From Hemiscyllium ocellatum (lineage: Eukaryota), in the NCBI RefSeq assembly GCF_020745735.1, contig NW_026867526.1, positions 474,416 to 538,415 of the forward strand: a stretch of DNA of 64,000 nt, given 5' to 3'. Positions within the stretch are counted from its first letter, which is position 1, and each line of letters starts with the position of its first letter. The notes below the pieces were generated by a model that worked only from the letters and a program-made list of their open reading frames with translations, was not told where the DNA came from and ran no database searches. The translations under genes and the position numbers were made by a program. This document shows, one piece after another, positions 16,446 through 64,000 of this stretch.

Positions 16446-17410
16446 CCATTTTGGCAGCTTAGGTATGCTATTTAGAAAGGGATAGTCTTACAAATAGTGA
16501 CGTTGCCAAGAAGTAGCCTTTTGGAAGTGAAAACACGGATTTCATTGTTTAAAGTCTTGGCAAAGAATAATCCCCAGTGAGACGTGTTGCTGACATGTGC
16601 AGCGTTCCGATACTCTACCAGTGTCTGGCTCACCGATGGCTCAACAGGGAGGACTGTCCGATTAGTGTACGTTTCCCAGACTTCAGCTGATGCCAAATGA
16701 AGATGCATCGCATAGAGAAACAAAGTTTGGCAGGAATCTTTGTGTGAGAACGTTCAATCAATACCTTTCTACGCATACATTTGAAACAGTAATGGACCCA
16801 AACCCTTGTTAAGATGAGCTGAAGAGGACAGGGCCATCCCACTTCTAGGTTCTGGTCAAATTCAGCCGTGAGCTGTTATTAAGTGCATACAACTACAAGT
16901 TGGAACACCAAGCAGGCGGTCAAGTGGTTAATGCCTGAAGCCAACTCCCAATAATGGATACACTGGAAAAGTCTGTTCTGGTTTTAAACTTTCTGCACAC
17001 CCTTCCAGTCATCTCTGACAATTTCCGATTAGAACAAGGTCCCGTACTGGTGAGAAAAAAGAAACAACTGCAGTATTAGAAACGAAAAGATCATCATAAG
17101 CAGGATTGAATCGTTTGTGGATCTGGTGAGATCAGATGGCCACTGAAAACTGCATACTAATATGGGGAACAAGGCTGAAAAATGTGTTGCTAGAAAAGTG
17201 CAGCAGGTCAGACAGCATCAAAGGAGCAGGAGAATCGACGTTTCAGGCATAAACCCTTCTTCAGCTCCAGCAGGGTCATCCTGTGATTTCCAAAATTAGG
17301 ATGTTGATAAGAATTTATGTTTGGTGGCCAGGATTGGATGCTGTGATAGCCATGTTGGTGGGGCAGTCGCCTGAGTGCCAATAGGGACAAGAATTGACTG
17401 GCCAGATATA
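16446..17410 (+). mobile_element. Gypsy pol remnant (RNaseH to integrase zinc finger), first array segment
   Basis: Homologous to the RNaseH/integrase segments in later monomers. Confidence 0.75.
17173..17264 (-). mobile_element. Truncated mini-Penelope pLTR with intact hammerhead core
   Basis: Minus strand CUGAAGA-a gggu uuau gccu-GAAA-CG-UC; 5' strand of stem I missing. Confidence 0.7.
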
Positions 17411-17419
17411 ACCTGGATT

Positions 17420-17535
17420 CAGTTATATTTTGACTATGCCATCGCATCGCCTTGCCTCACGTCTCTGCACATCGCATCGCGTCGCGTCACATATCGCATC
17501 GCCCCTCCCCTCCCCTCGGCTGAGCCCCCCCCCCG
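17420..17535. repeat. Low-complexity (ATCGC)n/(CCCCT)n tract at a Gypsy-RTE junction
   Basis: gccatcgcatcgcc...atcgcatcgcgtcgcgtc...cccctcccctcccctc...ccccccccc. Confidence 0.8.
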
Positions 17536-17850
17536 CCAGGATCCCAGTTTGGCTTTCAGCCAGAGAGTGATCCATTGAATATGATTTTCACTGCAGTATA
17601 TGGCCTTCTGGGATCTTTAAAAAGGCCTTTAACATCATCAATCGGGAAGCATTTCTGGAGCATTCTTCGTCGCTTTCGTTGCACCATGATGTTTGTCACC
17701 ATCCTTCACCTGCTCCACAATGATGTATAATTCATCAAAATGACAAACAACTTCAACACCTACCCATTCACCCTCTGAACCGGTGTCGAGCAGGGTATGT
17801 CATCACCGCAACACTTCTGAATCTACCTCGCTGCACAACTTCACTTCCGA
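17535..17850 (+). mobile_element. RTE LINE RT fragment (monomer 1, 3' half)
   Basis: SQFGFQP...KAFNIINREAF...TGVEQGYVI...DKLP. Confidence 0.8.
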
Positions 17851-18089
17851 CAAGCTGCCCATGTTTGATCCAAGGGGGCTTTAGTTGTGGTTCTGAACCA
17901 TTGCTGTCCCAGATGCTCTTAGTGGGGATCAGTGTGAGTGATGTCTTATTTTTAGTTGAAATATACAAGTGTACTTTCTCTGAATTTTAAACCGTTATTC
18001 TTCATTTCCCAGGAGTTTTCAATTTGCGACAGAGCAGAGATTTATTTAATTGAAAAGAACATTTAATTAATTAGTTTTTTATTTGGTTG

Positions 18090-18185
18090 AAAAGAACAAA
18101 TGCTGGCGAACTCAGCAGGTCAGAGAACATCCACGAGAGAGGGCAGCTAGTATTTCAAGACCAAATGAGTCCTCATTAGAGCTGT
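18090..18185 (-). mobile_element. Penelope pLTR module with decayed hammerhead (monomer 1)
   Basis: Minus strand cagct-CTAATGA-...-GAAA-tact-agctg. Confidence 0.7.
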
Positions 18186-18721
18186 TCATGTGTTGTTTAA
18201 TTTGCTTGAGAATATTTTTATTTTGGCCCCCTGTAGCCCCTGCCCACAAGTGGTTGGTGGGGCAGGGGAAGCCAGTTTTTGCCTGTTAAACAAAAAAGGC
18301 ACTATTGCTCTGTGGAAAGCCAGAAATAAATAAACCAAGTGAAAGCAGTTTAATTTCTGTTTTGAATATGCACAACATTTTTCCTGGTGATGTGTCTGTT
18401 CCAGGAATGTCTGATGCAGGCAGTATCAGGGGATCTTGGTTTTATTTTTTCATTTGCATTTTTGGTTTTAAAAGAGTTGGAGGGTTGTTTTGCAGACTGG
18501 AGGCCGGTGACAAATGCAGGGATTGGTACTGGGTGTAATGCCATTTTTCATTTCGGTAAAGGATTGGAATGTGAATATGAATGTGAATGTTCAACTGCAT
18601 CAGGAAATTCAATGCCGGCCACAAAACTCCTCTTTGCGCGTGAGGCAGTTTACTACATTGGACAAAATGTGCTGTTTAAACCATTGGAATGGCATGCATG
18701 GGGAAGGGGCATGGTCGAAGT

Positions 18722-18937
18722 AAAAGGAGAAAGTGAGGACTGCAGATGCTGGAGATCAGAGCTGAAAAAGCGCAGCAGGTCAGGCAGCATCCAAGGAGCA
18801 GGAGAATTGACGTTTTGGGCATAATCCTTCTTCAGGAATCAGTAATGAAGAAGGGCTTATGCCCGAAGCGTCGATTCTCCTGCTTCTTGGATGCTGCCTG
18901 ACCTGCTGTGCTTTTCCAGCAACACATTTTTCAGCTC
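18722..18937. mobile_element. Palindromic mini-Penelope element (two inverted pLTRs)
   Basis: Arms ~18758-18836 and ~18844-18937; TSD atggtcgaagt (18711-18721, 18938-18948); empty site at 49414. Confidence 0.85.
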
Positions 18938-19241
18938 ATGGTCGAAGTTAAGGGCAGGTCCCATGATGTCGGAGAGGCGGTCCTGAACAAATGTGAGGAT
19001 CTCATGATAGCTGTAACCCGCAAGTGGCCAAGGGCACGGCATAACCAGCTCCTCAGAACATGTGGCAAGGATGTTCTTGCCTGTGGGTTCTCCTCATCCT
19101 GCCAGTGTAGAAGATTTGAGGGCAAATGTGGCAGCCTTGATGCCATTACCAACTGCAGAAGAAGACAAATTTCTGCTGTGATGCAAATGGTGGTTGACAG
19201 TCCAGCATGTGGCGACAGGAACCAAGCTAGAGTCTGAGGAA

Positions 19242-19720
19242 AAAATGAGGTCTGCAGATGCTGGAGATCAGAGCTGAAAATGTGTTGCTGGAAAAGCGCA
19301 GCATCCAGATGATTAGGGGTTTAGATAGGGTAGATACTAAGAACCTTTTACCGCTAATGAGTCAGGTGTTACTAGGGGACATAGCTTTAAATTAAGGGGT
19401 GGTAGGTATAGGACAGATGTTAGGGGTAGATTCTTCACACAGCGGGTTGTGAGTTCATGGAATGCCCTGCCCGTATCAGTGGTGAACTCTCCTTCTTTAT
19501 GGTCATTTAAGCGGGCATTGGATAGGCATTTGGAAGTTATTGGGCTAGTATAGGTTAGGTAGGATTCGGCGCAACATCGAGGGCCGAAGGGCCTGTACTG
19601 CGCTGTATCCTTCTATGTTCTATGTTCTATGTTCTATGAACAGAAAATTCGACGTTTCGGGCATAAGCCCCTCATCATTCCTGCCTGACGTGCGCTTTTC
19701 CAGCCACACATTTTCAGTTC
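19242..19720. mobile_element. Mini-Penelope element with nested CR1 tail
   Basis: TSD gagtctgaggaa (19230-19241, 19721-19732); inverted ends gagctgaaaatgtgttgctggaaaagcgca; empty site at 49995. Confidence 0.85.
19308..19638 (+). mobile_element. CR1 LINE 3' end nested in mini-Penelope
   Basis: MIRGLDRVD...TRGHSFKLRG, tail (ctatgtt)n. Confidence 0.9.
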
Positions 19721-19879
19721 GAGTCTGAGGAAGTTGACCTAGTGGGAAAATGGTTATGGCTGGTCACCTTGTCCAATCAGGGAGTCCTGATTGGCAGATA
19801 TGTCAGGGGTCCTGCTCGATGAGTCATCTCTATGAAAGCCAGGTCAGTGTTGTGTACTGTGCATGTGGAAATTCTTGAA

Positions 19880-20520
19880 TTGCATCCAGTGGCATATTGC
19901 ACTCAAGGAGTTCAGTTATCGCCTAGCCTTGATGAAAAGGCAAACCTCCAGCTCAACAACAAAGCTGCAGGTGCAAGTGGTATTCCCCCTGAAGCATTGA
20001 AGTGTGGAGGCACTGAGCTCCCAGTGTAACTGTATGTCCTTGTGTGCCCTATGTAAAAGGAGGAGAGGATCCCAAGGGGGCTCCCAGATGCAAAAGTTAT
20101 TAGCATTGTCAACAAAGGGAACGTGTCAAACTGTGGTAACTGCAAGGTCAAATCCCTGATGTCAACCATTGGAAAACTCATCGCCAAGGTCCTTTTCAAG
20201 TGGCTCCTCCCTGCGTTTGAGGAACTCCTCTCTGGAGTCTCAGTGTGGCTTTGGCCCCAGAAAGTTACAATGGACATGTTTTTCACTGCTGTCTTGGACC
20301 CTCATGGAGCTTTGACACAATTAATTGAGAAGCATTTGTGAAGTGTTCTTCTCCAATTTAGTTGCAGTCTTTGGTCTGATCCACAACAAAGTGTAAGTCA
20401 TTATAATGGCAAACAGGGTCACCACCTGCCCATTTCCCCCTCTGAACCAGTGTCGAGCAGGGCCAAGTCATCACCTGAACACTGTTCTGAATCTGTGTTG
20501 CTGCAGGATCTCAATGCTGA
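19880..20520 (+). mobile_element. RTE LINE RT fragment (monomer 2)
   Basis: PSLDE...NNKAAGASGIPPEALKCGG; CGNCKVKSLMSTIGKLIAKVLF. Confidence 0.85.
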
Positions 20521-20685
20521 CAAGCTGACAACTTTTGACCCAATAGGACTTTAATTGTAGTCCTACATTGTCGCTGTCCCAGAAGCTCTTGATGGGGATC
20601 AGTGTGAGCTGTAAGTTATGTACAGCTGTACTTCCTCTCGATTTTATGCATCATTGTTCCTTTCCATGGAGTGTTCAATCATGAC

Positions 20686-21011
20686 GGCACGGTGGCACAG
20701 TGATGGGCGGCACGGTGGCACAGTGGTTAGCACTGCTGCCTCACAGCGCCTGTAGACCCGGGTTCAATTCCCGACTCAGGCGACTGACTGTGTGGAGTTT
20801 GCACGTTCTCCCCGTGTCTGCGTGGGTTTCCTCCGGGCGCTCCGGTTTCCTCCCACAGTCCAAAGATGTGCTCAGGTGAATTGGCCAAGCTAAATTGCCC
20901 GTAGTGTTAGGTAAGGTGTAATATGTAGGGGTATGGGTGGGTTGCGCTTCGGCGGGTCGGTGTGGACTTGTTGGGCTGAAGGGCCTGTTTCCACACTGTA
21001 AGTCTAATCTA
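20686..21011 (+). mobile_element. HE1 SINE (tRNA-derived), full length with duplicated 5' start
   Basis: A box tggcacagtgg, B box ggttcaattcc, HER1-type tail ccacactgtaagtctaatct; possible TSD atgac. Confidence 0.93.
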
Positions 21012-21049
21012 AAATGACAGTGCAGAGAGGATTCATTTATTCAGTTGAA

Positions 21050-21145
21050 AAGAACAAATGCTGGAGGTCGCAACAGGTCAGACAGCATCCATGACAGAGA
21101 GAGCAAGCTAAGACTTTGAGTCTAGCTGACTCCTCATCAGAGCTG
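21050..21145 (-). mobile_element. Penelope pLTR module with decayed hammerhead (monomer 2)
   Basis: cagct-CTGATGA-g gagtc agcta gactc-AAAG-tctt-agct. Confidence 0.75.
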
Positions 21146-21564
21146 TTCATTTATCATTTGTTTTCTTATATTTGCTTGAGTTTATTTTTATTTTGGCCCC
21201 CTTTGGCCACTGCCTAAAGCGGGTTGTTGCAGACATTGTCAACGGTGAGCCAATTTTTGTGAGTGTGTTTGTTTTTGCCGTTCCCTAGAGTCATAGTATC
21301 TTCATTTTTGGTTGACACACTGACAGTTGCTTTAATTCTTGTTTTGAAGTAGCAGAGTTAAAAAAAAATCACCAGGCTCATCCAAATGTTTGTTTGATAA
21401 TTCAATTTTTTTTGGAACGCTGTCCAATGAACATGGTGGATGACAATGTGTTGAGCGATGTTTAACTTTGTTGACCCCACTCCAACATTGGGCCCCACCT
21501 AGTCTTGAAAGAATAGAGTGTTTCACCCGGTGCTGTGCCTGTTTTGGGATTTTCTGATGCAGGA

Positions 21565-21970
21565 AATATCACAACTGCAATATTTAAAAGGCATCTGGAT
21601 GGAAATATGAATAGAAAGAGTTTTGATGGATATGAGCCAAGTGCTGGTAAGTGGGACTGGATACATTTAGAATATGTGGTTGGCATATTGAGTTGGGCTG
21701 AAGAGCCTGTTTCCATGTTATACGTCTCTGTAACTCTGTGCTTAGTGATTTTGCAGATGTCACCAAGTTTGCCGTATAGTAGATAGTGAAGTAGGTGATC
21801 AAAGATTCCAAATGTATCCTGATCAAGTGGGCCAATGGGCCAAGGAGAGGCAGATGGAGTTTATTCTTGATAAATGTGAGATGTTCCATTTTGATTAGAT
21901 GGACAGGGCAAGACTTTCACAGTTAATGGTAAGGCCTCTGGAGAATTGCCGAAGAGCAACCTAAGGTTTG
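21565..21970 (+). mobile_element. CR1 3' end plus CR1 RT fragment (monomer 2)
   Basis: IFKRHLDGNMNRKSFDGYEPSAGKWD, then DFAD-TK...QWAKE-QMEF. Confidence 0.8.
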
Positions 21971-22029
21971 GTAGAACCTCTATAATGCGGAAGCCGGCCA
22001 TTTGGCCTGTCGAGTTCACACAACCAATA

Positions 22030-24810
22030 CCACTTGATGTGCGTGCAAATGTAGAGGCAGCATTCATGAGGCTGGAAAGTGAAGCAATAATAAAACCACT
22101 ATATTTACTGTATCCACTGTAATGGTCGTCGCCATTGTGGGTCAGTTTGCCTTTGTGGAGATTTTGATGAAACAGTGATCTGTATTTTGCAGCCAGATAA
22201 ATAACCGATCCATCACATTGAGGAATTAAATGCAAAACTTTATAGGCTTTGTACTTCATGAAGCTGGATATGAGCCATGTGAAACTGCCATTGTGATTTG
22301 ATGAAGATTCCCATCAATATGCTACAATTACCAATATCCGAGACTGCTTTTTGTGTTGGGATATCATCAACTTGTGAAATTGTCCAGTGAACAATGGAGA
22401 ACGTTTCACTAGGTGTACCCCAGGATACAGTCGTTATGAATAATGTACGAATAACCGGGAAGAGGATTTTGAGAGAGTGTGCACAGCAATTAAATGGTTC
22501 TCCAGGGTCTTAGAAGGAAAAATGTGTATTCCAAGGCATTCCAAGTAACCTCCTTGAGCTATAGCATCATCAAGACCAGGTTAAACACATTGGAAAATTA
22601 AGTGAGGTCAATCAAGGGTGCCCTGGCACCCAGCAGAGCTTCGATCTTACCTTGGTTTGGTGAAATATTATGGATGCTTCTGTAATGTCCTGGCTTCCAT
22701 CTTGGCAGCTTGGATTTGCTATTCAGAAATGATCAGCATTGCAAATGATCTCATCGCCCAGAAGTAATCTTCAGGGAAGTGAAAAAGCAGGTATTGTAGA
22801 TGGTGTTGGCACACAATAAAGTTCCCATTGAGATGTGGTGCTGACATGTGATGCCTCCCAATACAGTTTGAGATGACTGCTGGCTCACTGATGCCTTGGC
22901 AGACATGGTATATGTTTCTCAAACTTTGTCTAATGTCAAATGAAGACATGTCCAGATAGAGAAGGAAGGTTTGGTGGTAATCCTTTGTGTGAGAAAGTGA
23001 CACCAATACCTTTTAGGACATCAATTTGAAATATAAATGGACCACAAACCGTTGCCAGGGAGACCTGATGGTATCAGGGCCATCACACCTCAAGCTTCAG
23101 GTCAGATTCAGTGGGCTGTCATGCTGAGTGCATAAACCCTCAGAAACCTGTGTGAGCAATCATGTGTTAAATGCAGTTGCGTGAAGCCTACTCCCTCTGG
23201 TGGATACACCATGGTGGGTGCCAGCAGTGAAAGAGTCTGTTCTGGTTTTAAACATTGCGGGCATGCTTCCCATCATCTCTGACAATCTCAGACTGTGGGT
23301 ACAAAAAGATCCCTTCCTGGTGAATCACAAACAGCTGGTGGTGTTGGAAATGAAAGGAGCATCACAACCAGAATTGAATCCTTTCTGGACTTGGTGAGAC
23401 TAGATGTCCATTGAGGATGGCATAGTAATACGGGGAGCAAGTGTGTTTGTCCCAAGCAAAGGTCACTGTCAGATACTGGCTGAACTCCACCAGGATCATC
23501 CTGTGATTTCCAAAATGAAGATGTTGACAAGATGTTTTGTCTGGTGGCCGGGATCAGATGCCGACGCAGCCATGTTTGTGGGTCAATGGCTGGAGTGCCA
23601 ACAAAGACAAAGATTGCCACCAGCAACTGCACCCCATCCATAGAACTGGTCAGGTAACATCTGGACACAGTTGCACGTCAACTGTGCCAGTGCTTTCATG
23701 GTGGTTATCCATTTAATCATTGTGTACACACAATGTGGTTGGATGTGCATGTCGTGCATTTGTCAAATGTGGGGATGACAATTGAAAAGTTGTGAGGATC
23801 TTTTACAGTACACAGAAACTGGACATGCTGGTCCCAGCTAGCAGGCCATCATTTAGCAGGAGGGAGCCTTGTGTCTTTCTTAAAGTGGAATGATATTCAG
23901 CATGTAAGGACAGCTGCATCTGTTGTCTGATAGTCTGGGGGAAAGAGCAGTTCAAACATTGAAAGAAAGTTTAAAGATACAGCCTGCAACTTTAGTCAAT
24001 ACACAAGTGTCCCAATTTGTGATTGATTATAGAACCAGCACTCACACAAATACAGGAACAGAAGCATTGGTATTGCAGAGAAGACTCCACTCCAGATTAA
24101 ATCTGATGTTCTTCCACCTTGTGGAGTGTGTGAAAAGGTGTCATGAACACCAATGCTGGCCGGAAGGTATTTCTATACGAGAGAGGCAGTTTAGGCCAGG
24201 AGACAAAATTTGCTGTTAAAGCGATTGGAATTGCCATGTATGTGTAAGAGGCATGGTCGAATGATGTACACTTCTCAAGGCAGAGAGGTGATCCTGATTC
24301 AGTATTTGTGTCAACCGATACCTATAACATCAAAAGTGGGGCAGGAAGAAAACATACCCAGCCACACGGAACATCCAACAGGCTGCCAGAAACTGTGGGT
24401 TCTCCCTGTCCTCCCAGTGTCCAAGAAACCTCTGAGGGCAAGATTGACATGGCAGATATCGCAGCCTTGATGCCATTACCACCAGCAGAAAAAGATGAAT
24501 TCCTGCTGAGATGCTCAATGGGCAAGAGGTAGGCAGCAGTCCAGTACATGCCAGCAGTATCTGCGCCAGACTCCGTGGAACCAAATCTGGTGTAAGCATG
24601 CCCCAGGAGAGGCAACAGCAAACAGAATGGGCCTTTTTCTCAGGACTGCAGAGTGGTGGACCTCACTGGATATGATTTCCCCGATTGGGGCAGTTAACCT
24701 GGTCCAATCAGGCAGTCCAGGCAGACAGATGTGTTAGCAGTTCTGCTCACTTGAGTTTCCAGCTCTGTAAAGTCTTGCTGAAGTATTACACAGTGTGCAT
24801 GTGTACATTG
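22030..24810 (+). mobile_element. Gypsy pol (RT-RNaseH-integrase) pseudogene, PPT/LTR remnant (monomer 2)
   Basis: Integrase zinc finger SIEDGIVIRGASVFVP...ELHQDHPVISKMKML...WWPG (23404-23643); core GERAVQTLK...DYRT..H..TG (23923-24219). Confidence 0.9.
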
Positions 24811-24819
24811 TTGATTTGC

Positions 24820-25450
24820 TTCGCCCAGCATATTACACGCAAGGAGCTCAGCTTTACCATATCTTGGATGGAACAGAGATGGCCATCCACCCGATGAGGA
24901 AGATGACAGCTGCAAATGGCTCTTCCCTTGAGGCATTGATGTGTGAAGTACTGAGCTCCCAGTGCAGTTGAATTCCCTTGCCTGAATGATCTGGAAGGAG
25001 GAGGGCACCCCAGGAGAGCTCCCAGATGACAAAGTCATTAGTGCTTTCAAAAATGGCAACATGTCAGACTGTTGTAACCACAGGGGATTATTCCAGATGT
25101 TGGCCACTGGAAACTCACCATCAACTGTCTCTTCCCTGTGGCTGAGGAACTCCTCCCAGAGTCTCAGCGTCAGTCAACCATAGTTAAGCACAATGGACAT
25201 GGTTTTCAATGCTGTATATGTCCCTTTTGAACCTTATAAAGGCCTTTGACACCATCAGTTGGGAAGCATTTGTCGAACATTCTTTTCCGCTTAGTTGCAG
25301 CTTGAAGTTTGTAACCATCCTTTGACACTTCCACAAATGTCTATAAGTAATCGTAATGACAAACTGCTTCAATACTTACCCAGTTGAGCAGGGCTGTCTG
25401 ATCAACTCAACACTGTTCTGAATTGACCTCGCTGCAGGGTGTCATTGCTG
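24820..25450 (+). mobile_element. RTE LINE RT fragment (monomer 3)
   Basis: IWKEEGTPGELPDDKVISAFKNGNMSDCCNHRG. Confidence 0.85.
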
Positions 25451-25561
25451 ACAATCTGCCCAGTTTTGAGCCCAGGTGGCTTTTATTGTAGTCCTGCATT
25501 TTCGCTGTCCCAGAAGCTCTTGTTGGGCTTCAGTTTGAGGGTCAAGGTACTTTTCTTTGAA

Positions 25562-25855
25562 GGGTGCGGCACAGTGGTTAGCAATGCTGCCTCACAGCGC
25601 CAGAGACCTGGGTTCCATTCCTGCCTCAGGCAACTGTCTGTGTGGAGTTTGCACATTCTCCCTGTGTTTGCATGGGTTTCCTCTGTGTGCTCCAGATTCC
25701 TCCCACAGTCCAAAAATTTGCAGGTTAGGTAAATTGGCCATTCTAAATTGCCATTCGTATTTGTTGAGGGGGTAAATGTTGAGGAATGGGTCTGGGTGGG
25801 TTGCTCTTTGGAGGGTCAGTGTGGGCTTGTTTCCACACTGTAAGTAATCTAGTCT
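25562..25855 (+). mobile_element. HE1 SINE shared by both higher-order copies
   Basis: A/B boxes and tail; same site as 54973-55285. Confidence 0.92.
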
Positions 25856-25954
25856 GTGAGCAGTTGTAGGACCTCTGGGTTTTAACAAGTATTGTTCCTT
25901 TCCCAGGAGTGTTCCATAGCAACAAAGCAGAGAACATTTTTTAATTTCGTTGAA

Positions 25955-26050
25955 AAGAGCAAATGCTGGAGATCACAGTGGGTCAGACAGCATCCATGAG
26001 AGAGAGCAAGCTAAGTTTTAGTGTCGGGATGTCTCCTCATCAGAGCTGTT
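25955..26050 (-). mobile_element. Penelope pLTR module with decayed hammerhead (monomer 3)
   Basis: cagct-CTGATGA-...-AAAA-ctt-agct. Confidence 0.75.
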
Positions 26051-26279
26051 CATTTATTGTTTGTTTTCTGTGATTTACTTGAGGTTAGTTTTATATTGGC
26101 CCCTTGTGACCCCTGCCCACGAGTGCTTGGTGGGGACTGAGGCCAGGGATAGCCAGTTTTTGATTATTTATTTCCTTCTGACTTTGCCCAGAGGGAATAG
26201 TTTTTTTTTGTTTTAGAAATTGACAGCAGGTTTAGTTTCTGTTTTAAGAGCAGAGTGTATGCCACAGTGTGGTGCCTGA

Positions 26280-54865: not shown

Positions 54866-54972
54866 ATCTGCTCATTTTGAGCCCAGGTGGCTTTTATTGT
54901 AGTCCTGCATTTTCGCTGTCCCAGAAGCTCTTGTTGGACTTCAGTATGAGGGTTTAGATACTTTTCTTTGAC

Positions 54973-55285
54973 GTGGGAGACACAGTGGCACAGTGGTTAG
55001 CAATGCAGCCTCACAGCGCCAGAGACCTGGGTTCCATTCCTGCCTCAGGCAACTGTCTGTGTGGAGTTTGCACATTCTCCCTGCATGGGTTTCCTCTGTG
55101 TGCTCCAGTTTCCTCCCACAGTCCAAAAATGTTCAGGTTAGGTGAATTGGCCATTCTAAATTGCCAGTCGTATTTGTTGAGGGGGTAAATGTCGAGGAAT
55201 GGGTCTGGGTGGGTTCCTCTTTGGAGGGTCGGTGTGGGCTTGTTGGGCCGAAGGGCCTGTTTCCACACTGTAAGTAATCTAATCT
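54973..55285 (+). mobile_element. HE1 SINE shared with copy A
   Basis: Same insertion site as 25562-25855. Confidence 0.92.
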
Positions 55286-55384
55286 GTGAGCAGTTGTAGG
55301 ACTTCTGGATTTTAACAAATATTGTTCCTTTCCCAGGAGTGTTCCATAGCAACAAAGCAGAGAGCATTTTTTATTTCATTGAAA

Positions 55385-55478
55385 AGAGCAAATGCTGGAG
55401 ATCACAGTGGGTCAGACAGCATCCATGAGAGAGAGCAAGCTAAGTTTTAGTGTTGAGACGTCTCCTCATCAGAGCTGT
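55385..55478 (-). mobile_element. Penelope pLTR module (copy B, monomer 3)
   Basis: Paralog of 25955-26050. Confidence 0.7.
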
Positions 55479-55709
55479 TCATTTATTGTTTGCTTTCTGT
55501 GATTTGCTTGAGGTTAGTTTTATATTGGCCCCTTGTGGCCCCTGCCCACGAGTGCTTGGTGGGGACTGAGTCCAGGGAGAGCCAGTTTGCGATTGTTTAT
55601 TTCCTCCTGACTTTGCCCAGAGGAATAGTATGTTTTTGTTTTGTTTTAGAAATTGAAAGCAGGTTTAGTTTCTGTTTTAAGAGCAGAGTGTATGCCGCAG
55701 TGTGGTGCC

Positions 55710-56665
55710 TGATCTTGGGAATGTCTGTTGCAGGCAGTGAGGGATGTTTTTCAGGCTGGAGGCCTGTGGTGAATACAGGAATGGATGCTGGGTCCAATTC
55801 CATTTTTCATTTATGTAAAAGATTTCAATGAGAATATAGGATGCATGGTTTGTGAGGAATGGCAGGTCAAGTTTAATTTTAATAAATGCAATATGTTGCA
55901 CTTTGGTTAGAGGGACAGGACAAGATTTACACAGTTCACAGTAGGGCTTGTGGAGTGTTGTCAAACAGAGAGACCTCGGGGTTGGCAGAATGTCTTGGTG
56001 ACCAATTACATCGATCCCTGAAATTTCCCATCCAGGTTGGTAGGCCTGTCAAGAAAGCATACGATGTTAGCTTTTCTTGGTAGAGGTATTGAGTTTCTGA
56101 GCCATGAGGTCATGTTGCAGCTGTAGAAAACTCTGGTTTGGCCACACTTCGAGTATTGTGTGCTTTCTGGTCACTGCATTATAGGAAGGATGCAGATTGT
56201 TGGGAAAGGGTTCAGAGGCGATTTATTAGGATGTTGTCTGGTCTGAAGGGAAGTTCTTTTGAAGAAAGGCTGAGGGACTTGAGGCTGTTTTCATTCGAGA
56301 GAAAAAGGTTGAGAGGTGACTTAATTGAAATATCTGGGGCAATCAGAAGATTCAGGGTGGAGAGTGAGAGTCTTTTTCAACGGATGGTGATGGCTCACAT
56401 GAGGGGACACAGCTTTAAATCGAGGAGTGATTGATGCAGGACAGATGTCAGAGGTAGTTTCTTTACTCAGAGAGTTGTACGGGTGTGGAATGCCCTGCCT
56501 GCAACTGTTGTAGACTCACCTAATTTATGGGAATTTAAATGGTCATTGGATAAACTATGGATGAAAATGAAATTGTGCAGGATAGATGGGCTTCAGATTG
56601 GTTCCACAAGTCATTGCATCATCGAGGGTTGAAGGACCTGTGCTGCGCTCTAATGGTCTCTGTTG
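55710..56665 (+). mobile_element. CR1 RT to 3' tail (copy B, monomer 3)
   Basis: ORF 56138-56434, paralog of 26704-26997. Confidence 0.88.
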
Positions 56666-56669
56666 TATG

Positions 56670-57205
56670 CCCTGAACAAACGTGCAGATAACAGGACAGC
56701 TGCAAATTCTCAAGTGGCCAGTCTCAAAACATACCCAGCCCCTCAGAACATCTGGCACGGCTGTCCGAACCTTTGGGTTCTCCCCGTCTCCCCATTGTGG
56801 AAGAAACTTCTGAGGGCGAGATGGACGTGGCAGATGTCTCAGCCTTGACACCTTTACCCACCAGCAGAAGAAGATAAATCTTTTCTGAGACGCAAGAAGT
56901 GGGCCACAGTACAGCATGGCACCTTTGTTCAAGCCAGAGCCCGAGGAAGTGGACCGAGTGGGAAGATGACTCAGGAAAGTGACAGGAAAGAGAATGGGCC
57001 CATGTCCCAGGGCTGAGAGGAGGATGGAGGTAGTGATTGGAACGTAGTCACCCAGTGAACCTCAGTAAATATAATTCCCCTGGTTGGGGCTCTTCCCCTG
57101 GTCCAAGCCGGGAGAACTGACTGGCAGGTGTGTCAGGGGTTCTGCTCACTCGAGGAGACATCTGTGTGAAGGCTCGGTCAGTGTCATGTCCTGTGCATGT
57201 GTAAA
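56670..57205 (+). mobile_element. Gypsy 3' end, PPT, LTR remnant (copy B, monomer 3)
   Basis: Paralog of 27217-27770. Confidence 0.75.
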
Positions 57206-57209
57206 TTGT

Positions 57210-57880
57210 TGAAGTGCATCCCGCAGCATGTTGCATGCAAGGAGCTCAGCAGTAACCAAGCCTTAGATGAGACCAAGAAGACTGTCCACCATCTTAAGAA
57301 TGAGACTGTGGGTGCAAGTGGTACTCCCCCGAGTGCGGAGATACTGAGCTCCCCGTGTAGCTGTATGCCCTTGTCTGCCTTACCTGGAAGGAGGAGAACA
57401 TCCCAGGAGAGTTCCCAAATGCCACAGTTGTGAGTGTTATCAAAAAACGGAACACGTCAGAGTGTGGGAACTCCAGGGGAATATTCTCAATGTCGAGCAT
57501 TGGAAAACTCATCGCCAAGGCCCTGTTCAACTCTCTCATCCTAGTGCCTGAGGAACTCCTCCCGGAGACTCAGTCTGGCTTTCTGTCACAGAGGACCACA
57601 ATGGACATGATTGTCACTGCTGCATATCAAGTTCTTCGACCTTACAAAGGCGTTTGACACCATCAATCAGGAAGCATTTTTGAAGTGTTCTTCACCACTT
57701 TAGTTACAGCATGACATTTGTCACCACCCTTCTCCTGGTCCACAATGACAGATGTCATCATCATGACATGGCTTCAACACCTGCCCTTTGCCCCTTTGAA
57801 CTGGTGGTGAGCAGGGCTGTGTCATCACCACAACACTCCTGAACCTAAGTTGCTGCAGGACCACTCCACCGACAAGCTGC
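57210..57880 (+). mobile_element. RTE LINE RT fragment (copy B, monomer 4)
   Basis: SECGNSRGIFSMSSIGKLIAKALFNSL. Confidence 0.85.
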
Positions 57881-58082
57881 CCACATTTACTCCTAGGGGG
57901 CTTTTGTTTTAGTCCTGCACTGTTGTTGTCCCAAAAACACTTGATGGGGTTCAGTGTGAGTGATAAATTATTTTCAGTTGAAATGAGCAGGTGTACTTCC
58001 TCTGGATTGCAACCCATTGTTGTTCTTTTCCCAGGAGTGTTCAATAGCGACATAACAGAGAGGGTTTATTCTTTGAAAAAAC

Positions 58083-58173
58083 CAAATGCTGGATATTACT
58101 GCAGGTCAGACAGCATCCATGAGAGAGAGCAAGCTTGGATATAGAGTCGAGATGATTCCTCATCAGAGCTGTT
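58083..58173 (-). mobile_element. Penelope pLTR module (copy B, monomer 4)
   Basis: CTGATGA retained, GAAA lost. Confidence 0.7.
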
Positions 58174-58219
58174 CATTTATTGTTTCTCTTCTTTGATTGA
58201 CTTGAGTTTCTTTTTATGA

Positions 58220-58810
58220 GGCTACAGGTGCAATAGGTGTTCCCCCTGAGGCATTGAGGTGGATGGGCACTGAGCTCCCAATGCAGCTGCATGCCCTTGT
58301 CTGCCTTACCTGGAAGGAGGAGAGCATCCCAGGAGAGCTCCCAGATGCCACAGTTGTGAGTGTTTTCACAAGAGAACGTGTGAGGCTGTGCTAACTACAG
58401 CAAAATCTCCCTGATGTCGACCATTGGAAAACGTATCACCAAGGTCCTTGTCAACTCTCTCCTGCCTGTGCCTGAGTAACCCATCCTGGAATTTCTGTGT
58501 TCTTCAGCCCCAGACGGGAACAAAGGACAAAATTTTTGCTGTTCTATACGGTGCTCTTAGAACTTTCAAAGTCCTTTGACACCATCAAACAGGAAGCATC
58601 TGTGGAGCATTCTTCTCTGATTTAGTTGCATCATGAACCTTGTCACCATCCCTCACCTGGTCCAGAACGATGTGTGAGTCATTTTAAAGACAAATGGTTT
58701 CAACACTGACCCATTCTGCCTCTGACCCAGTGTCGAGTAGGGCAATGTCATCACCACAAAACAGCTCTGAATCTACCTCACTGCAGGACCTCACCTCAGA
58801 TAAGCTGCCC
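58220..58810 (+). mobile_element. RTE LINE RT fragment (copy B, monomer 5)
   Basis: Paralog of 28790-29365. Confidence 0.85.
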
Positions 58811-59024
58811 ACTTTTAGACCAAGGTGGCTTGTATTGAAGTCCTGCAATGCCGCTAACCAGAAACCCTTGATGGTAGTCAGTGTAAGCAGTACATTGTTT
58901 TTAGTTGAAATGAGCAGGTGTCCTTCCTCTGGATTTTTAACCATTCCCAGATACCCTCCTTAGGACTGTTCAATATTGACAGAGCAGAGAGAGGTGATTT
59001 TTAACATAAATTTTGTTGAAATGA

Positions 59025-59118
59025 ACAAATGCTGGAGATTACAGCGGGTCAGACGAAATCCATGAGAGAGAGCAAGCTAAGATTTTGTGTTAAGATGACT
59101 GTGCATTTGAGCTGTTCA
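59025..59118 (-). mobile_element. Penelope pLTR module (copy B, monomer 5)
   Basis: Paralog of 29590-29680. Confidence 0.65.
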
Positions 59119-59599
59119 TCTGTTGTTTGTTTTATTTGACAACCTTGACTTTATTTTATTTTGGCACTGTGTGACCCATGCCCAGGAGTGGTTGGTGGAC
59201 ACAGGGAGAGCCAGGTTTTAATTGTTTATTTCCTTCTGGTTTTCCCTCAAGGAAAAGTGTGTTTTTTTCGTTTTACAAAGTGAAAGCAGCTTGTGTTTCT
59301 GTTTTGGAAGAGTAGAGTACTATGCCTATTTGGATGAGTGTGTTGCACAGACTGGGTGTTAGTTATCAGACTGGAGGCTTGTGATGAATATATGAATTGG
59401 TGATGTGTCCAATGCTGTTTGTCATTTATGTAAAGGATTGGGTTGAGAAAATAGGGCGCATGGTTTGTAAGGAATGTTAGGCAGAGTATAATTTTGATGC
59501 ATGCAAAATAGTGCATTTGGTATGTGGAATAAGCCAAGACCACATTTGGAATGGCCTGTAGAGTGTTGTCGAACAGAGAGCCCGAGGGTTGACAAAACC

Positions 59600-62345
59600 T
59601 CTACAGTGCGGAAGTAGGCCATTTGGCACAACAGGCCCACACTATCAGTCTCATTTCCCTTACGTGCAAAAGTAGAGGCACAAATCAAGGGCCTGGAAAG
59701 CTAACGATGATCAAACCACTGCAGTGTGCCCTATGTGCAGCACTGTTCAAACCCATTATGCGTCAATTTGCCTATGTGGAGATTTCAAAGATTCGATGAG
59801 GGAATTTTTGAAGCCAGGTATATAACTGATGCATCACATTAAGGACTTGTCTGGAAAACCACAGATGCCTTGTCCTTTACAAAGCTGGATATGTGTCATA
59901 TGAATGTAGCATTGTGCTTCAATGAGGATTCCCATAAATATGCTACAGTTAATACCCATAAAGGGTATAATCACTGTATTTGACTGCGTTTGTTTTGGGA
60001 TATCATCAGCCAATGAATCGTTTCCAGTGAATGGCCGAGAACTGTTTACAAGGTCTACCCATGATCCCTATTTCTATGAAGATTTGCTAATCACAGGGAA
60101 GATCAATAAAGATCATTTAATGTTTGTCCAAGATCTTAGGAAGGAAGAAAATGTGTTCCAAGCCACCTCAAGTGGCATAATTGAGCTACTGCATGGCCAA
60201 GTGGGTAAGACAGATTGAAAGATAAAGCAAGGACAACCAAGGGTTCATCGGCTCCTACGTCTGCATTGGAGCTTTAGTCTTTCCTTGGGTTGGTGAATTA
60301 TTACGGAGAAAATTGTGTAATCCCCTGGCCTCCATTTTGGCAGCTGAGATTTGCTATTGAGAAGGGCCTGCTTTGCAAATACTCACATCGCCAAGAAGAA
60401 CCCTTAGGGGAATTGAAAAAGCAGCTATCATCATTTAATGCCTTGGCAGAGAATGGTCTCCAGTCAGATGTGGCACTGACGTACAAAGCATCACCATCTG
60501 GTATCCAGTTACTGCTGGCTCACCGACAGAAGGGATTGCCTGGTCGTACTTGCTTCCCAGAGTTTGGCTGATGCTGAATGAAAATGCATCCAGATGGAGA
60601 TGGAAAGTTTGACAGTAACCTTTTGTTTGAGAAATTTCAAACAATACACTTTTGCACATATCTTTGGTGCAGTAATGTGCCACAAAGCCCTGCTAGAGCG
60701 ACCTGAAGAAGGCAGGGTTATCCCATTTGCAGCTTCAGGTTAAGTTCAGAAGTGAGCTCTTATTCTGAGTACATGGATTTACAAGTTGGAATACCATATC
60801 TGCAGTCACCTGGTTAATGCCTGAAGTCACCATGGCGCGTGCCACCAATGGAAGAGTTCATTTTGGTTTTAACCGTTCTGCATCCTTTCTGGTCATCTCT
60901 GACAATATCACACTGTAGATACAAGAATTTCCTGTCCTGGCGAAACAAGAACCACTGGTGGTGTTCGAAACTGATGACGATCATCATAACCAGGATGGAA
61001 TTCTTTCTGGAGCTGGCAAGACCAGATGACTGTTGAAGATGGCACGCTTATGTGGGGAGCAAACGTGTTTGTTACAGACAAAGGTCATTGTCAGATACCA
61101 GCTAAACTCCACCAGACTCCACCTATGATTTCCAAAATGAAGATATTGGTGAGAGGTTATGTCTGATAGCCAGAATTGGATGCCGATGCAGCCATGTTGG
61201 TGGGACAGTATCCACAATGCCAAGAAGGACAGAAATTGTCACCAGCAGTGCACCATTTTCATGGCACTGACCAGGTAGAACCTTAGCTCAGTTACACGTC
61301 GAATGTGCCAGTCCATTTTGTGGGATCTGTACTTTAAGGATGTCGGTCACAGATAAAGGGTATTCATTTGCCAGCAGGTAGTTTAGTGTATTACCTAAAA
61401 TCGAATGGCATTCGCATGTAGTGACAACTGCATGTGTTGTCTGATTGTATGGTGGAAAGTACAGTCCAAACATTGAGGGCAAAGTTAAGTAAACAGCCGA
61501 CAACTTCACTGGATGTCAAACTGTCCCACTTTCTCTCTGATTATAGAAACATCGCTCACACAACTGCAGTGACATCGCCACCAGAATAGCTAATGTGAAG
61601 AAGCCTCCAAGTTAAATTGGATCTTCTCGGATGTTGTGGGGAGAGTGACACGGCATCAGGAAGGCCAATGCCAGTCACAAAACCCCTCTTTGTGGGAGGC
61701 AGTTTATTTCATGGCACAAAATGTGCGGTTGAATCGGTGGGAATGGCCCTGAATGTGTTCAAAGTGAAGTCAGGTCACAAGATGTACAATGCTTATGTCA
61801 CACTAGAAGTCCTGAACAATTTTGAGGATCACATGATTGCTGCAACCTCAAGACGTGGTCAGGAGCACAACATACCCAGCCCCTCACAACATTCAGCAAG
61901 GATGTCCGAACCTGTGGGTTCTCCCCCTCCTCCACTCAGTGTGGAAGAATCCTCTGAGAGTGAGATGGACGTGGCAGATGTTGCAGCATTGACACCATTA
62001 CCACCTGTAGAAGAAGATACATTTCTTCTGAGATGCAAGAGGTGGGCCACAGTCCAGCCCAAGGCGGCGGAATGCAGCCTCGAGTCCGAAGAAGTGGATC
62101 TCGTGGGAAAATGACTCATGATATGTTGCAGGAAAGAGAATGGGCCTTTGTCCCAGGAATTAGATGGGGATGGAAGTAATGACTGGGACTCAGTCAATGA
62201 GTGAACCTCATTGAATATATATTTCCAGGTTGGGGCTGTTCACCTGGTCTAATCAGGGAGACCTGATTGGCAGATGTGTCGGCGATCTGCTCACTTGAGG
62301 AGCTGTCTCTATGAAAGCGAGGTCAGTGTCATGTACTTTGCCCAT
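59600..62345 (+). mobile_element. Gypsy pol pseudogene, uninterrupted, with PPT and LTR remnant (copy B, monomer 5)
   Basis: Equals 30165-31448 joined to 34788-36215. Confidence 0.9.
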
Positions 62346-62354
62346 GGAGAATTT

Positions 62355-63008
62355 TGGATTGCATGCCATAACATGTTACATGCATGGAGTTCAGCAATAT
62401 CTAAGCCTTGGATCAAATAGAGAAAGTGGTCCTCCAGCTCGAGAACAGGGCTGCAGTTGCAAATGGTATTCCCCCTCCAGCCTAGAACTGAGGAGGCACC
62501 GAGCTTCCAGTGCAACTGAATATCCTTGTCTGCCTTCTCTGGAAGGAGGAGAGCATCCCAGGAGAGCTGCCAGATGCCAAAGTCAGGAGTATTTTCAAAT
62601 AATGGAACATGTCAGACTGTGGTACGTTCAGGGCAATGTCCGTGATGTTGACCACTGGACAATTCATCGCCAAGGTACTTTTCAACTGTCTCTTCCTTAT
62701 GGCTGATGAACTCCCTCTGCAGTTTCAGTGTGACTTTCGGACTCAGATGGGCACATTAAGCATGACTGTGTAGGGCCTTCTTCAACCTTACAAAGGCCTT
62801 TGACACCATCAATCAGAAAGCACTTGTACAGCATTCCTCTCCACCTTCGATGCAGCATGAAGTTTGTAACCATATGTCACCTGATCCACAACAACGTGTA
62901 AATCACCGTAATAACAAGCGGCCTCAACACCCGTCCATTCCCCCTTTAACTCGGTGTCGAGCATTGCTGTGTCTTCACCACAAAACTGCTCTGAATCTAC
63001 CTCACAAC
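62355..63008 (+). mobile_element. RTE LINE RT fragment (copy B, monomer 6)
   Basis: Paralog of 36240-36875. Confidence 0.85.
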
Positions 63009-63066
63009 ATCCATGAGAGAGAGCAAGCTAAGATTTTGAATCTTGATGACTTCTCATCAGAGCTGT
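63008..63066 (-). mobile_element. Penelope pLTR module (copy B, monomer 6)
   Basis: cagct-CTGATGA-gaagtcatcaagattc-AAAA-tctt-agct. Confidence 0.7.
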
Positions 63067-63544
63067 TTATTTATTGTTTGTTTTCTATGATATGTTTGAG
63101 TTTGTTTTTATGTTACCCCCTGTAGACCCTGCCCCTGAGTGATTGGTGGGAACAGAGTCCAGCAGAGCCAGGTTTTGATTCTGTCTTTCTACAGAATAAT
63201 AGTGTCTTTTTTGTTCAACTAGTCGCTTTAGGTTCTTTTTGAAAGAGCAGAGCATATGTCACGGTCTTGTGCCTGTTCTGGGAGTGTCTGATGCAGGCAG
63301 TGATGGTTGTTTATCAGATTGGAAGCCTGTGATGAATGCAGGAATCGGTGCTGGGTCGAATGCCGTTGGTCATTTATGTAAAGGATTTGGGTGAGAATAT
63401 GGGATGCATGGTTGGTGAGGATTGGCAGGTGGAGTTTTATTTTGATAAATGAAAATTGTCGCATATTGGTAAGTGTTGCAGTGCAAGACCTACACAGGGC
63501 GGGGCAGGGCCTGTGGATTGTTGTTGAACCAAGAGTCCCGGGGG

Positions 63545-64000
63545 TTGACAGAACTTCTACAGTGTGGAGGCAGGCCATTTGACAGAATAGGTCCACACCA
63601 CCAGTGCCATTCGCCTTGTGTGCAAAAGTAGAGGCATGAGCCTGGAGAGCTGAGGGATCATCAAACCACCGTAGTTTGCCATAGGAGAGTACTGTTGATA
63701 CCCAATATTGGTCGAGTAGCATTTGTGGCAATTTGAAAGAAATATTGAGCCAGTTTTTGAAGCCAGATAAATAACCAGTAAATTGCATTGAGGCGTTTTA
63801 TGCAAAAGTGCACGGGACCTGTTTGTCATGACGCTGGAAATGAGCTGTGTGAATGTGCCATTGTGATTCAGTGAGGATTCCCATAAACATGCACCAATTA
63901 ATACCCATGAGGGATGGAAACAATATACTTGACTGCCTGTCTTTTAGGGTATCATCAGGCGGTGAACAGTTCCAGGGAATGAGGAGAACATTTTACAAGG
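63545..64000 (+). mobile_element. Gypsy RT start (copy B, monomer 6), cut by the window end
   Basis: Paralog of 37335-37780. Confidence 0.8.

What the first reader, a model, noticed from the sequence alone, without database searches (positions are those of the whole stretch)
16446..64000. Macrosatellite whose monomer is a chimera of four retroelement classes
Seen: about 15 head-to-tail monomers (~1-5 kb, excluding later insertions) with a fixed order: RTE RT > U1 > Penelope pLTR > U2 > CR1 RT > Gypsy pol > PPT > LTR. The junctions are shared: the LTR remnant runs into RTE at LNCIPQH-like codons and RTE stops at DKLP before U1 wherever the modules are present. Established: TE-derived satellites exist, but usually derive from one element. 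Inference: a single nested-TE pile-up was amplified as a unit long ago, since monomers are clearly diverged and differently deleted. It may be a lineage-specific heterochromatic, sex-chromosome or piRNA-source repeat. Standard repeat masking would split it into unrelated fragments and miss it.
Basis: partly seen in the sequence, partly recalled or inferred. Interest (0 to 1): 0.8.

Follow-up and report, generated by a model that had tools for sequence, protein, structure and literature searches.

The report
Shark macrosatellite built from dead retroelements
From base 16445 to the end of the window, a 4.2-kb block of fused, dead fragments of at least three kinds of jumping genes is repeated head-to-tail about 16 times; it is a real and old repeat also found in related sharks, but it is a clean example of a kind already described, not a new one.

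Summary
Window 16445-64000 tiles collinearly, all on the + strand, with one 4230-bp unit (reference copy 58219-62448). There are 16 monomers of 0.9-4.9 kb once later insertions are removed, each with its own deletions.

- **Junctions.** The truncation points are the same in every monomer that keeps them. This rules out independent insertions.
- **Age tiers.** Divergence falls into three tiers (K2P 0.3-0.47, 0.16-0.19, 0.03-0.09). The youngest is a ~30-kb higher-order repeat.
- **Other copies.** Contigs from runs of the same organism and two other labelled organisms bridge the junctions and share one monomer-specific deletion. The repeat is therefore multi-copy and older than those species.

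Not verified: the PPT/LTR label, the RTE clade, and any function (no RNA evidence; the longest ORF evolves neutrally). Composite satellites from 'TE graveyards' are already published (PMC12628747). Verdict: a real new member of a known kind, of moderate interest.

The parts
16445..64000 (+). Whole array within the window: 16 head-to-tail monomers of a 4230-bp composite unit. It is cut by the window end, so it continues beyond.
16445..17620 (+). M1: partial monomer at the array's left edge (ref 2113-3020, inside the pol RNase H/integrase region).
17621..19963 (+). M2 (ref 350-1234, then 3432-4222). It carries a later short CR1 3'-end insertion at ~19241-19721.
19964..24905 (+). M3 (ref 3-4081). 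It carries a later SINE at 20704-21013 and a CR1 3'-end insertion within ~21200-21930 (clearest ~21517-21783; limits approximate). It keeps ~30 CR1 codons (KFADDTK...) that the other monomers lost.
24906..27866 (+). M4 (ref 6-1379, then 3591-4221). It carries a SINE at 25568-25831. Its CR1 fragment runs on to the CR1 3' end (26556-27232) in place of the pol.
27867..28785 (+). M5: short monomer (ref 1-944) that restarts directly at ref 1.
28786..36315 (+). M6: full monomer split by a young LINE insertion. It is 93-97% identical to M15.
31449..34785 (-). Later insertion: a young CR1-like LINE with GDSL-esterase ORF1 (33626-34237) and RT ORF (31738-33195). The empty site is preserved in M15 at 60887/60888. 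It is 97% identical to 6422-7698.
36316..40307 (+). M7 (ref 2-563, then 846-4219; deletion 564-839). A SINE at 40095-40292 (-) lies at its end.
40308..42306 (+). M8 (ref 13-473, an inverted 149-bp piece of ref 2243-2391, then ref 2880-4221).
42307..45631 (+). M9 (ref 1-3331). It is joined to M10 through 34 unrelated bases (45598-45631).
   Evidence: the same joint in a contig of run X1
45632..47991 (+). M10 (ref 428-2362, a short duplication of 2146-2296, then 3982-4221).
47992..50240 (+). M11 (ref 1-1010, then 3432-4193). It carries a later SINE at 49552-49864 (-). The empty site is in M2 at 19089.
50241..54313 (+). M12: higher-order copy of M3.
54314..57342 (+). M13: higher-order copy of M4 (SINE at 54973-55282, CR1 3' part at 55990-56671).
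57343..58218 (+). M14: higher-order copy of M5.
58219..62448 (+). M15: the reference monomer, 4230 bp, with no later insertion.
62449..64000 (+). M16: higher-order copy of M7, with the same 563->840 deletion. Cut by the window end.
62328..63018 (+). It covers profile positions ~459-701 of 1063.
58804..59016 (.). U1 spacer in M15 (ref ~586-798), unidentified.
59017..59178 (-). Remnant in M15 of the abundant hammerhead-type (Penelope-like) repeat. The minus strand reads CTGATGAG-stem-loop-stem-AAA, with the GAAA box decayed.
   Evidence: Rfam negative
59179..59362 (.). U2 spacer in M15 (ref ~961-1144), unidentified.
59363..59583 (+). CR1-like RT fragment in M15. It corresponds to aa ~264-343 of the window's own CR1-like ORF2.
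59584..62111 (+). LTR-retroelement (Ty3/Gypsy-type) pol remnant in M15: RT, FLGLVNYY linker, RNase H, integrase zinc finger, integrase C-terminus. It is full of stops and internal deletions, and the frame ends at ref 3893.
62112..62327 (.). A purine-rich run follows the pol stop. No LTR evidence was found.
17536..37782 (+). Higher-order repeat, copy A.
48261..64000 (+). Higher-order repeat, copy B. It is 88-96% identical to copy A (up to 97% in sub-regions), with an offset of ~29.4-30.7 kb ahead of the LINE insertion in copy A and ~26.1 kb past it.

Best explanation
This is a TE-derived composite macrosatellite. An ancestral ~4.2-kb (or somewhat longer) stretch had already been reduced by truncation and deletion to a mosaic of dead retroelement fragments. 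In order, these are: a LINE RT piece, a spacer holding a small antisense hammerhead-type Penelope-like remnant, a CR1-like RT piece, an LTR-retroelement pol from the start of RT to the integrase C-terminus, and 215 unidentified bases.

That stretch was duplicated in tandem and expanded as one unit. The likely mechanism is unequal crossing-over or other non-allelic homologous repair between misaligned copies. Repeated rounds gave three age tiers: old monomer lineages; an intermediate duplication of the M6/M7-like segment into M8-M10; and a recent ~30-kb higher-order repeat of about nine monomers. Monomer-specific deletions, a small inversion and mosaic monomers appeared along the way. CR1-like LINEs and tRNA-like SINEs kept inserting afterwards.

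Shown: the tandem structure, the shared junctions, the age tiers, the later insertions with empty sites, and the presence of the same junctions in other runs and in other labelled organisms. Inferred: the recombination mechanism, and that the array has no sequence-specific function.
For: - **Tiling.** The array tiles collinearly and head-to-tail with one unit.
- **Shared LINE truncation.** The LINE fragment starts at profile position ~457-465 in all five monomers whose 5' edge is visible, and ends at ~688-705 in every monomer that keeps its 3' part.
- **Two LINEs, not one.** The CR1 fragment starts at aa ~264 wherever its start is kept (M10, M13; ~269 in M4). Both LINE fragments contain the same RT motif.
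- **Pol remnant.** Integrase_H2C2 scores E 1.3e-7, with weak collinear RT_RNaseH_2 and RT_RNaseH matches.
- **Age tiers.** Identity and K2P values fall into 0.29-0.47, 0.16-0.19 and 0.03-0.09.
- **Later insertions.** The 3.3-kb LINE and a SINE each have a filled site in one higher-order copy and an empty site in the other, so they came after that duplication.
- **No coding constraint.** The longest ORF (171 aa) differs between M6 and M15 at 12 residues for ~15 base changes (sequences).
- **Other copies and species.** Thousands of contigs at least 85% alike occur in runs of organisms A, B and D. Contigs in D bridge LINE|U1|hammerhead remnant (58664-59151, ~94% identity) and pol|X|LINE|next monomer (61953-62567). 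The M16-type deletion joint is present in A and B. The M9|M10 joint occurs in A with 3 changed letters, so it comes from another copy.
- **Copy number.** Even a 594-million-letter run holds 41% of the junction words.
- **Literature.** The concept is published.
Against: - The closure junction of the first duplication was not identified. The left edge of the array (ref 2113) is a secondary break.
- Two characters conflict on a simple tree. A 90-bp CR1 deletion is shared by M4 and most other monomers, while loss of the CR1 3' part is shared by M3 and most other monomers. This needs recombination or conversion among monomers.
- Other first-reader notes report look-alike arrays at several loci. Simple in-place unequal crossing-over does not explain that by itself.
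- Absence of function was not tested. No RNA or small-RNA data could be laid.
Confidence: 0.85

Rival explanations
1. The array began as one LTR retrotransposon whose 5' half was overwritten by nested LINE and Penelope-like insertions. Exchange between its two LTRs then produced an (LTR-internal)n tandem that later expanded. The 215 unidentified bases would be the shared LTR.
For: The pol runs to its natural stop at ref 3893 and is followed by a purine-rich run. The non-pol modules sit where gag and protease would be. (LTR-internal)n tandem arrays are known from established knowledge.
Against: Only 215 bp separate the pol stop from the LINE fragment. That stretch matches nothing and shows no LTR ends. 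Neither LINE fragment has its 3' end, as a clean nested insertion would, so deletions must be assumed anyway. No second LTR copy exists in the window for comparison.
Confidence: 0.12
2. The unit is, or was, spread between loci as a unit, for example by circular DNA re-insertion or by large segmental duplications. It may have a locus-linked role, such as at immunoglobulin clusters, as a heterochromatin block, or as a piRNA source.
For: It is multi-copy well beyond the window. Unchecked first-reader notes describe look-alike 'four-family ~4 kb cassette' arrays 383 kb upstream and on other pieces, two of them beside IgM clusters. It is retained in at least two other labelled organisms.
Against: No Ig gene lies in the 16 kb upstream in this window. 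No RNA run holds the sequence. The ORFs evolve neutrally. The other notes were not followed up, and their sequences could not be compared here.
Confidence: 0.1
3. The same elements inserted independently and repeatedly into a hotspot.
For: CR1-like LINEs and SINEs did insert repeatedly into the array.
Against: Every monomer shares the same internal truncation points of all the fragments, and the unidentified spacers align between monomers.
Confidence: 0.01
4. The array is an assembly artefact, a falsely expanded repeat.
For: Long repeats are hard to assemble.
Against: Monomers differ by 3-35% and carry different deletions. Contigs from independent runs, samples and studies, and from other labelled organisms, hold the same junctions.
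Confidence: 0.02

Closest known systems
Composite satellite DNA monomers from 'TE graveyards' (Satovic-Vuksic, Majcen & Plohl 2025, DNA Res, PMC12628747)
   Same: The monomer is a series of consecutive stretches similar to different, degraded TE types. The proposed origin is tandem amplification of a shuffled dead-TE locus.
   Different: The published cases are described as monomers with short stretches of TE similarity, reported from bivalves. Here the unit is 4.2 kb, still shows readable coding remnants of at least three retroelement types, has a ~30-kb higher-order repeat, and is in a cartilaginous fish.
Human macrosatellites such as D4Z4 (3.3-kb unit), reviewed in PMC5687341
   Same: The unit is kilobase-sized and head-to-tail, occurs at more than one locus, and has a composite repeat-derived content (the last point from my own knowledge).
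   Different: D4Z4 carries a retrogene (DUX4) and has a known epigenetic role. No intact gene or function is seen here.
Satellites born from a single TE, and tandem TE dimers that expand into arrays (McGurk & Barbash 2018, from my own knowledge; mechanisms reviewed in PMC12628747)
   Same: Tandem amplification of TE sequence by unequal exchange.
   Different: Those derive from one element. Here several unrelated fragments with fixed junctions form the unit.

Membership tests
Macrosatellite / satellite DNA | Head-to-tail tandem copies of one unit | tested here: met
   Collinear tiling of 16445-64000 by one 4230-bp unit, all on the + strand.
Macrosatellite / satellite DNA | Unit of a kilobase or more, present in many copies | tested here: met
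   16 monomers lie in the window, and the array is cut by the window end. Junction contigs from low-coverage runs are multi-copy.
Macrosatellite / satellite DNA | Higher-order repeat structure | tested here: met
   17536-37782 matches 48261-64000 at 88-96% identity, against 68-78% between the oldest monomer lineages and 83-86% in the intermediate tier.
Composite TE-graveyard satellite (PMC12628747) | Monomer made of consecutive stretches similar to different TE types | tested here: met
   LINE RT fragment, CR1-like RT fragment and LTR-retroelement pol are shown. The hammerhead-type remnant is only partly supported.
Composite TE-graveyard satellite (PMC12628747) | Location in heterochromatin | not testable with these tools
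   No chromatin or cytogenetic data are available.
RTE-clade LINE (module 1) | Single ORF with an N-terminal APE endonuclease and an RT, in a compact ~3.2-4 kb element without ORF1 | tested here: inconclusive
   Intact relatives are 1030-1075 aa with APE+RT, mostly on contigs of 3.3-5 kb. This fits RTE, but contig length is only indirect evidence.
RTE-clade LINE (module 1) | Placement inside the RTE clade in an RT phylogeny with reference elements | not testable with these tools
   No reference LINE set was available, and source names were uninformative.
CR1-like LINE (module 5) | Homology to a LINE with an esterase ORF1 and a CR1-type RT | tested here: met
   tblastn of the window's own LINE ORF2 matches the module; that LINE's ORF1 hits GDSL lipase at 2.3e-13. 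In M4 the CR1 3' part is 76% identical in DNA to 3592-4269.
Ty3/Gypsy LTR retrotransposon (module 6) | pol with RT, then RNase H, then integrase, in that order | tested here: met
   Integrase_H2C2 scores E 1.3e-7 at ref ~2850-3040. RT_RNaseH_2 (E 0.012) and RT_RNaseH (E 0.2) lie upstream and collinear. RT and FLGLVNYY motifs were read directly. Gypsy was not separated from other RT-RH-IN groups.
Ty3/Gypsy LTR retrotransposon (module 6) | Flanking LTR and polypurine tract | tested here: inconclusive
   A purine-rich run follows the stop, but the next 215 bp match nothing and have no second copy for comparison.
Penelope-like element (module 3) | Hammerhead ribozyme motif of the pseudo-LTR | tested here: inconclusive
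   Rfam gave no hammerhead hit at any threshold, and the window has no intact CTGATGA...GAAAC. The minus strand keeps CTGATGAG plus a 5-bp stem. Contigs of the matching, very abundant dispersed family keep ...CTGATGA...GACTCGAAA.
Penelope-like element (module 3) | Penelope RT or GIY-YIG coding sequence | tested here: not met
   The module is ~150 bp and non-coding.
piRNA cluster | Dense small-RNA production | not testable with these tools
   No RNA run holds the sequence.

The most novel reading that the evidence does not exclude
The cassette may be a multi-locus repeat family, conserved among related sharks, that sits beside the dispersed immunoglobulin heavy-chain clusters (IgM, IgNAR). There it could act either as the homologous substrate that lets whole clusters duplicate and be lost, or as a macrosatellite-type chromatin block involved in silencing all but a few clusters per B cell.
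Probability: 0.08. Interest if true: 0.7.

Novelty: new member of a known kind. Interest (0 to 1): 0.4.

Why it matters
This is an unusually legible vertebrate example of a satellite recycled from a 'graveyard' of several unrelated transposons. The coding remnants still show exactly which part of each element was frozen into the unit. The three age tiers and the shared deletion across species give a timeline for how a macrosatellite grows. Standard repeat masking would report it as scattered LINE, LTR and unknown fragments. Arrays like this may therefore be under-counted in shark genomes and may confuse TE age and abundance landscapes. If the unchecked lead that look-alike arrays flank Ig clusters holds, it could bear on how the shark multi-cluster Ig loci expand.

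Tried and rejected
- **Tandem Repeats Finder:** no rows, because the period exceeds its 500-bp limit.
- **Rfam:** no hammerhead or any credible family with the whole window at gathering score, 42-64 kb at E up to 5, or 261 bp around the best-preserved motif at E up to 10.
- **Exact hammerhead pattern:** no match to CTGATGA-N6-30-GAAAC in the window.
- **Pfam on about 35 stop-free pieces of the monomers and 13 ORFs or pieces of the left flank:** only Integrase_H2C2 was significant. RVT_1, RT_RNaseH_2 and RT_RNaseH were weak, and the rest gave nothing.
- **The search for homologous proteins on decayed pieces:** nothing. With an intact relative it returned many hits but no informative names.
- **ESM Atlas on two pol pieces:** nothing usable.
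- **Are the 215 bp before the LINE fragment its own linker region?** A profile of 108 intact relatives finds no consistent match, so this was rejected.
- **Does the LINE fragment run on beyond 'DKLP' (an apparent DKLFSVEMSR ~ DGKLFNLRRL match seen by eye)?** The profile gives no support, so this was rejected.
- **RNA evidence:** no run on record as RNA holds the stretch.
- **Literature on repeats flanking shark IgM clusters:** nothing found.
not built (see referred steps).
Full report

The window has no N runs. Self-BLASTN gives 274 non-redundant repeat pairs, 254 of them direct. A 1-kb dot plot shows that nearly all lie between ~16.4 kb and the window end. Within-window repeat depth jumps from 0 to 4-12 at ~16.5 kb.

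I took 58219-62440 as a reference. The whole of 16445-64000 is tiled collinearly and head-to-tail on the + strand. The true period is 4230 bp, because the next monomer starts at 62449. There are 16 monomers, M1-M16. They measure 0.87-4.9 kb once later insertions are removed, and each has its own deletions. Tandem Repeats Finder saw nothing only because its period limit is 500 bp.

**2. What is the unit made of?**

Coordinates are in the reference monomer, where ref x = window 58218 + x.

(a) LINE RT fragment, ref ~4110-4230 and on through 1 to ~585.
- A profile of seven stop-free pieces from different monomers (A1) found 1632 proteins. The best is from whale shark.
- Long hits are APE+RT ORFs of 1030-1210 aa.
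- A local profile of 108 intact relatives (mostly 1030-1075 aa) matches the monomers only at positions ~457-705 of 1063. The start (457-465) is the same in all five monomers whose 5' edge is visible, and the end (688-705) is the same in every monomer that keeps the 3' part.
- It does not extend further on either side.
- Relatives sit mostly on contigs of 3.3-5 kb with a single ORF. This fits an RTE-type architecture, but the clade was not tested.

(b) Spacers and hammerhead-type remnant, ref ~585-1145.
- This stretch aligns between monomers.
- Its middle (~ref 800-960) reads on the minus strand as CTGATGAG, a 5-bp stem, a loop, the stem again, then AAA. This is a hammerhead-like core with the GAAA box decayed.
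- Rfam does not recognise it.
- In the read-laying experiment this bin is by far the deepest. The clipped ends of the dispersed copies read ...TTTCGAGTC...CTTCATCAG, which is CTGATGA...GACTCGAAA on the minus strand.
- Earlier notes on this genome describe very abundant ~90-bp Penelope-type hammerhead mini-elements. I treat those notes as a lead only.
- The 'Penelope' module is therefore a small antisense remnant, plausibly of that family. It is not a pseudo-LTR that I could verify.

(c) CR1-like RT fragment, ref ~1145-1365.
- It matches aa ~264-343 of the window's own young LINE, whose ORF1 is a GDSL esterase and whose ORF2 hits RVT_1 at 1e-34.
- Fragments (a) and (c) both contain the same RT motif (G-x-x-QG-x-x-L-x-P-x-LF region). 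They are only ~25% identical to each other's family. They are therefore two different LINEs, not one.

(d) LTR-retroelement pol, ref ~1365-3893.
- The parts in order are an RT with a decayed YxDD box, the FLGLVNYY linker, RNase H, the integrase zinc finger and the integrase C-terminus, ending at the natural stop.
- Pfam gives RT_RNaseH_2 at E 0.012, RT_RNaseH at E 0.2 and Integrase_H2C2 at E 1.3e-7 (above the curated cut-off), all collinear.
- The pol is riddled with stops and has internal deletions.

(e) Unidentified 215 bp, ref 3895-4110.
- It begins with a purine-rich run.

**3. Are the junctions shared?**

Yes.
- Alignments to the reference span each junction in several monomer lineages that are independent of the recent higher-order duplication. 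LINE|U1 is spanned in seven lineages, U2|CR1 and CR1|pol in four to five, pol|X in five, X|LINE in at least seven, and the monomer-to-monomer passage in at least seven.
- The protein-level truncation points are identical.
- Independent insertion into a hotspot is excluded.

**4. History**

Identity matrices for three regions give three tiers.
- **Old lineages** (M1, M3, M4, M5, M7, the M6 group): 66-78% identity, K2P 0.29-0.47.
- **Intermediate tier:** M6/M15 with M8, M9 and M10, and the M7/M16 head with the M9 head, at 83-86% identity, K2P 0.16-0.19.
- **Recent tier:** a higher-order duplication, 17536-37782 against 48261-64000, at 88-96% identity by BLAST (up to 97% in sub-regions), K2P 0.03-0.09. 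Its period is ~30 kb, about nine monomers.

M9 is a mosaic: its head resembles M7 and its body resembles M6. Two deletion characters conflict on any simple tree. Both facts are expected if unequal exchange shuffles monomers.

Later insertions are dated by filled and empty sites.
- The 3.3-kb CR1-like LINE at 31449-34785 (-) is absent from the exact site in M15. It is 97% identical to another copy at 6422-7698.
- A SINE at 49552-49864 is absent from M2 at 19089.
- Other SINE and short CR1 3'-end insertions lie at different positions in different monomers.

The array's left edge (ref 2113) falls inside the pol. It is therefore a secondary break, not the original unit boundary.

**5. Beyond the window**

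- Runs of the source organism hold ~40% of the monomer's 31-mers, even though each run is only 0.6-3.7 billion letters. Three other labelled organisms hold 5-10%.
- I laid contigs of four runs on 58219-63005 at 85% likeness or more. This gave 2000-2800 contigs each in organisms A, B and D, covering all 30 bins.
- In organism D, contigs bridge LINE|U1|hammerhead remnant (58664-59151, ~94% identity). They also bridge pol|X|LINE|next monomer (61953-62567).
- The M16-type deletion joint (63005 to 59058) occurs in A with the window's own three letters, AAC, and in B with CAC.
- The M9|M10 joint, with its 34 filler letters, occurs in A with three changed letters relative to the window. That contig therefore comes from a further copy of the higher-order repeat.
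- The unit is thus multi-copy beyond this window, and its diversification predates the split of at least A and B.
- Depth figures are sums over contigs and are not copy numbers. A count in the tens to hundreds is my rough inference only.

**6. Function**

- None is shown. No run on record as RNA holds the sequence.
- The longest ORF (171 aa, integrase C-terminus) differs between M6 and M15 at 12 residues for about 15 base changes. That is neutral decay.
- The piRNA, heterochromatin and sex-chromosome ideas remain untested.

**7. Comparison with what is known**

- Satellites whose monomers are strings of similarities to several TE types, born from 'TE graveyards', were described and explained in 2025 (PMC12628747).
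- This array fits that model and is a large, legible vertebrate case with a higher-order repeat. I therefore file it as a new member of a known kind.
It does not make this categorically new.

**8. A lead not tested here**

First-reader notes on the same genome describe look-alike 'four-family ~4 kb cassette' macrosatellites 383 kb upstream on the same piece and on other pieces. Two of these are beside IgM clusters and one is near an IgNAR V gene. I could not read those windows. This window has no Ig gene in its 16-kb left flank. The notes agree with the multi-copy signal and motivate the novel reading, which I rate at under 10%.

**9. Limits**

All comparisons are between real copies.

Noticed in passing
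window 1500-8500: At least two further copies of the same CR1-like LINE family lie here. They give an APE hit at 1720-2154 (+), RT hits at 2574-3951 and 6095-7396, and a 270-aa ORF at 5633-6445 with no Pfam family. The copy at 6422-7698 is 97% identical to the insertion inside the array.
   Followed up: partly
window 31449-34785 (-): The young LINE inside M6 has a GDSL-esterase ORF1 and an RT ORF. There is no recognisable APE domain between them, only ~430 bp, so it looks internally deleted.
   Followed up: no
window 20704-21013, 25568-25831, 40095-40292, 49552-49864, 54973-55282: A ~310-bp tRNA-like SINE (GGCACAGTGGTTAGCACTGCTGCC...) is inserted in both orientations at different monomer positions. 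Two copies are 96% identical, so the family was active after the higher-order duplication.
   Followed up: partly
window 13700-16300: Stop-free pieces on both strands (14408-15085 +, 15261-16260 -) look by eye like Penelope-type GIY-YIG and RT sequence in opposed orientation, just left of the array. Pfam found nothing, so this is unverified.
   Followed up: partly
window 11422-12015 (+): Two adjacent stop-free pieces look by eye like a hAT/ZBED-type transposase remnant. Pfam found nothing.
   Followed up: partly
window 40806-40954: Inside M8, a 149-bp piece of the pol region (ref 2243-2391) sits inverted between ref 473 and ref 2880. It is a small local inversion or insertion at a deletion joint.
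   Followed up: no
window 26556-27232 and 55990-56671: In M4/M13 the CR1 fragment continues collinearly to the CR1 3' end instead of joining the pol. This is either an ancestral state lost elsewhere or a conversion from a dispersed CR1 copy. It conflicts with the distribution of a 90-bp CR1 deletion.
   Followed up: partly
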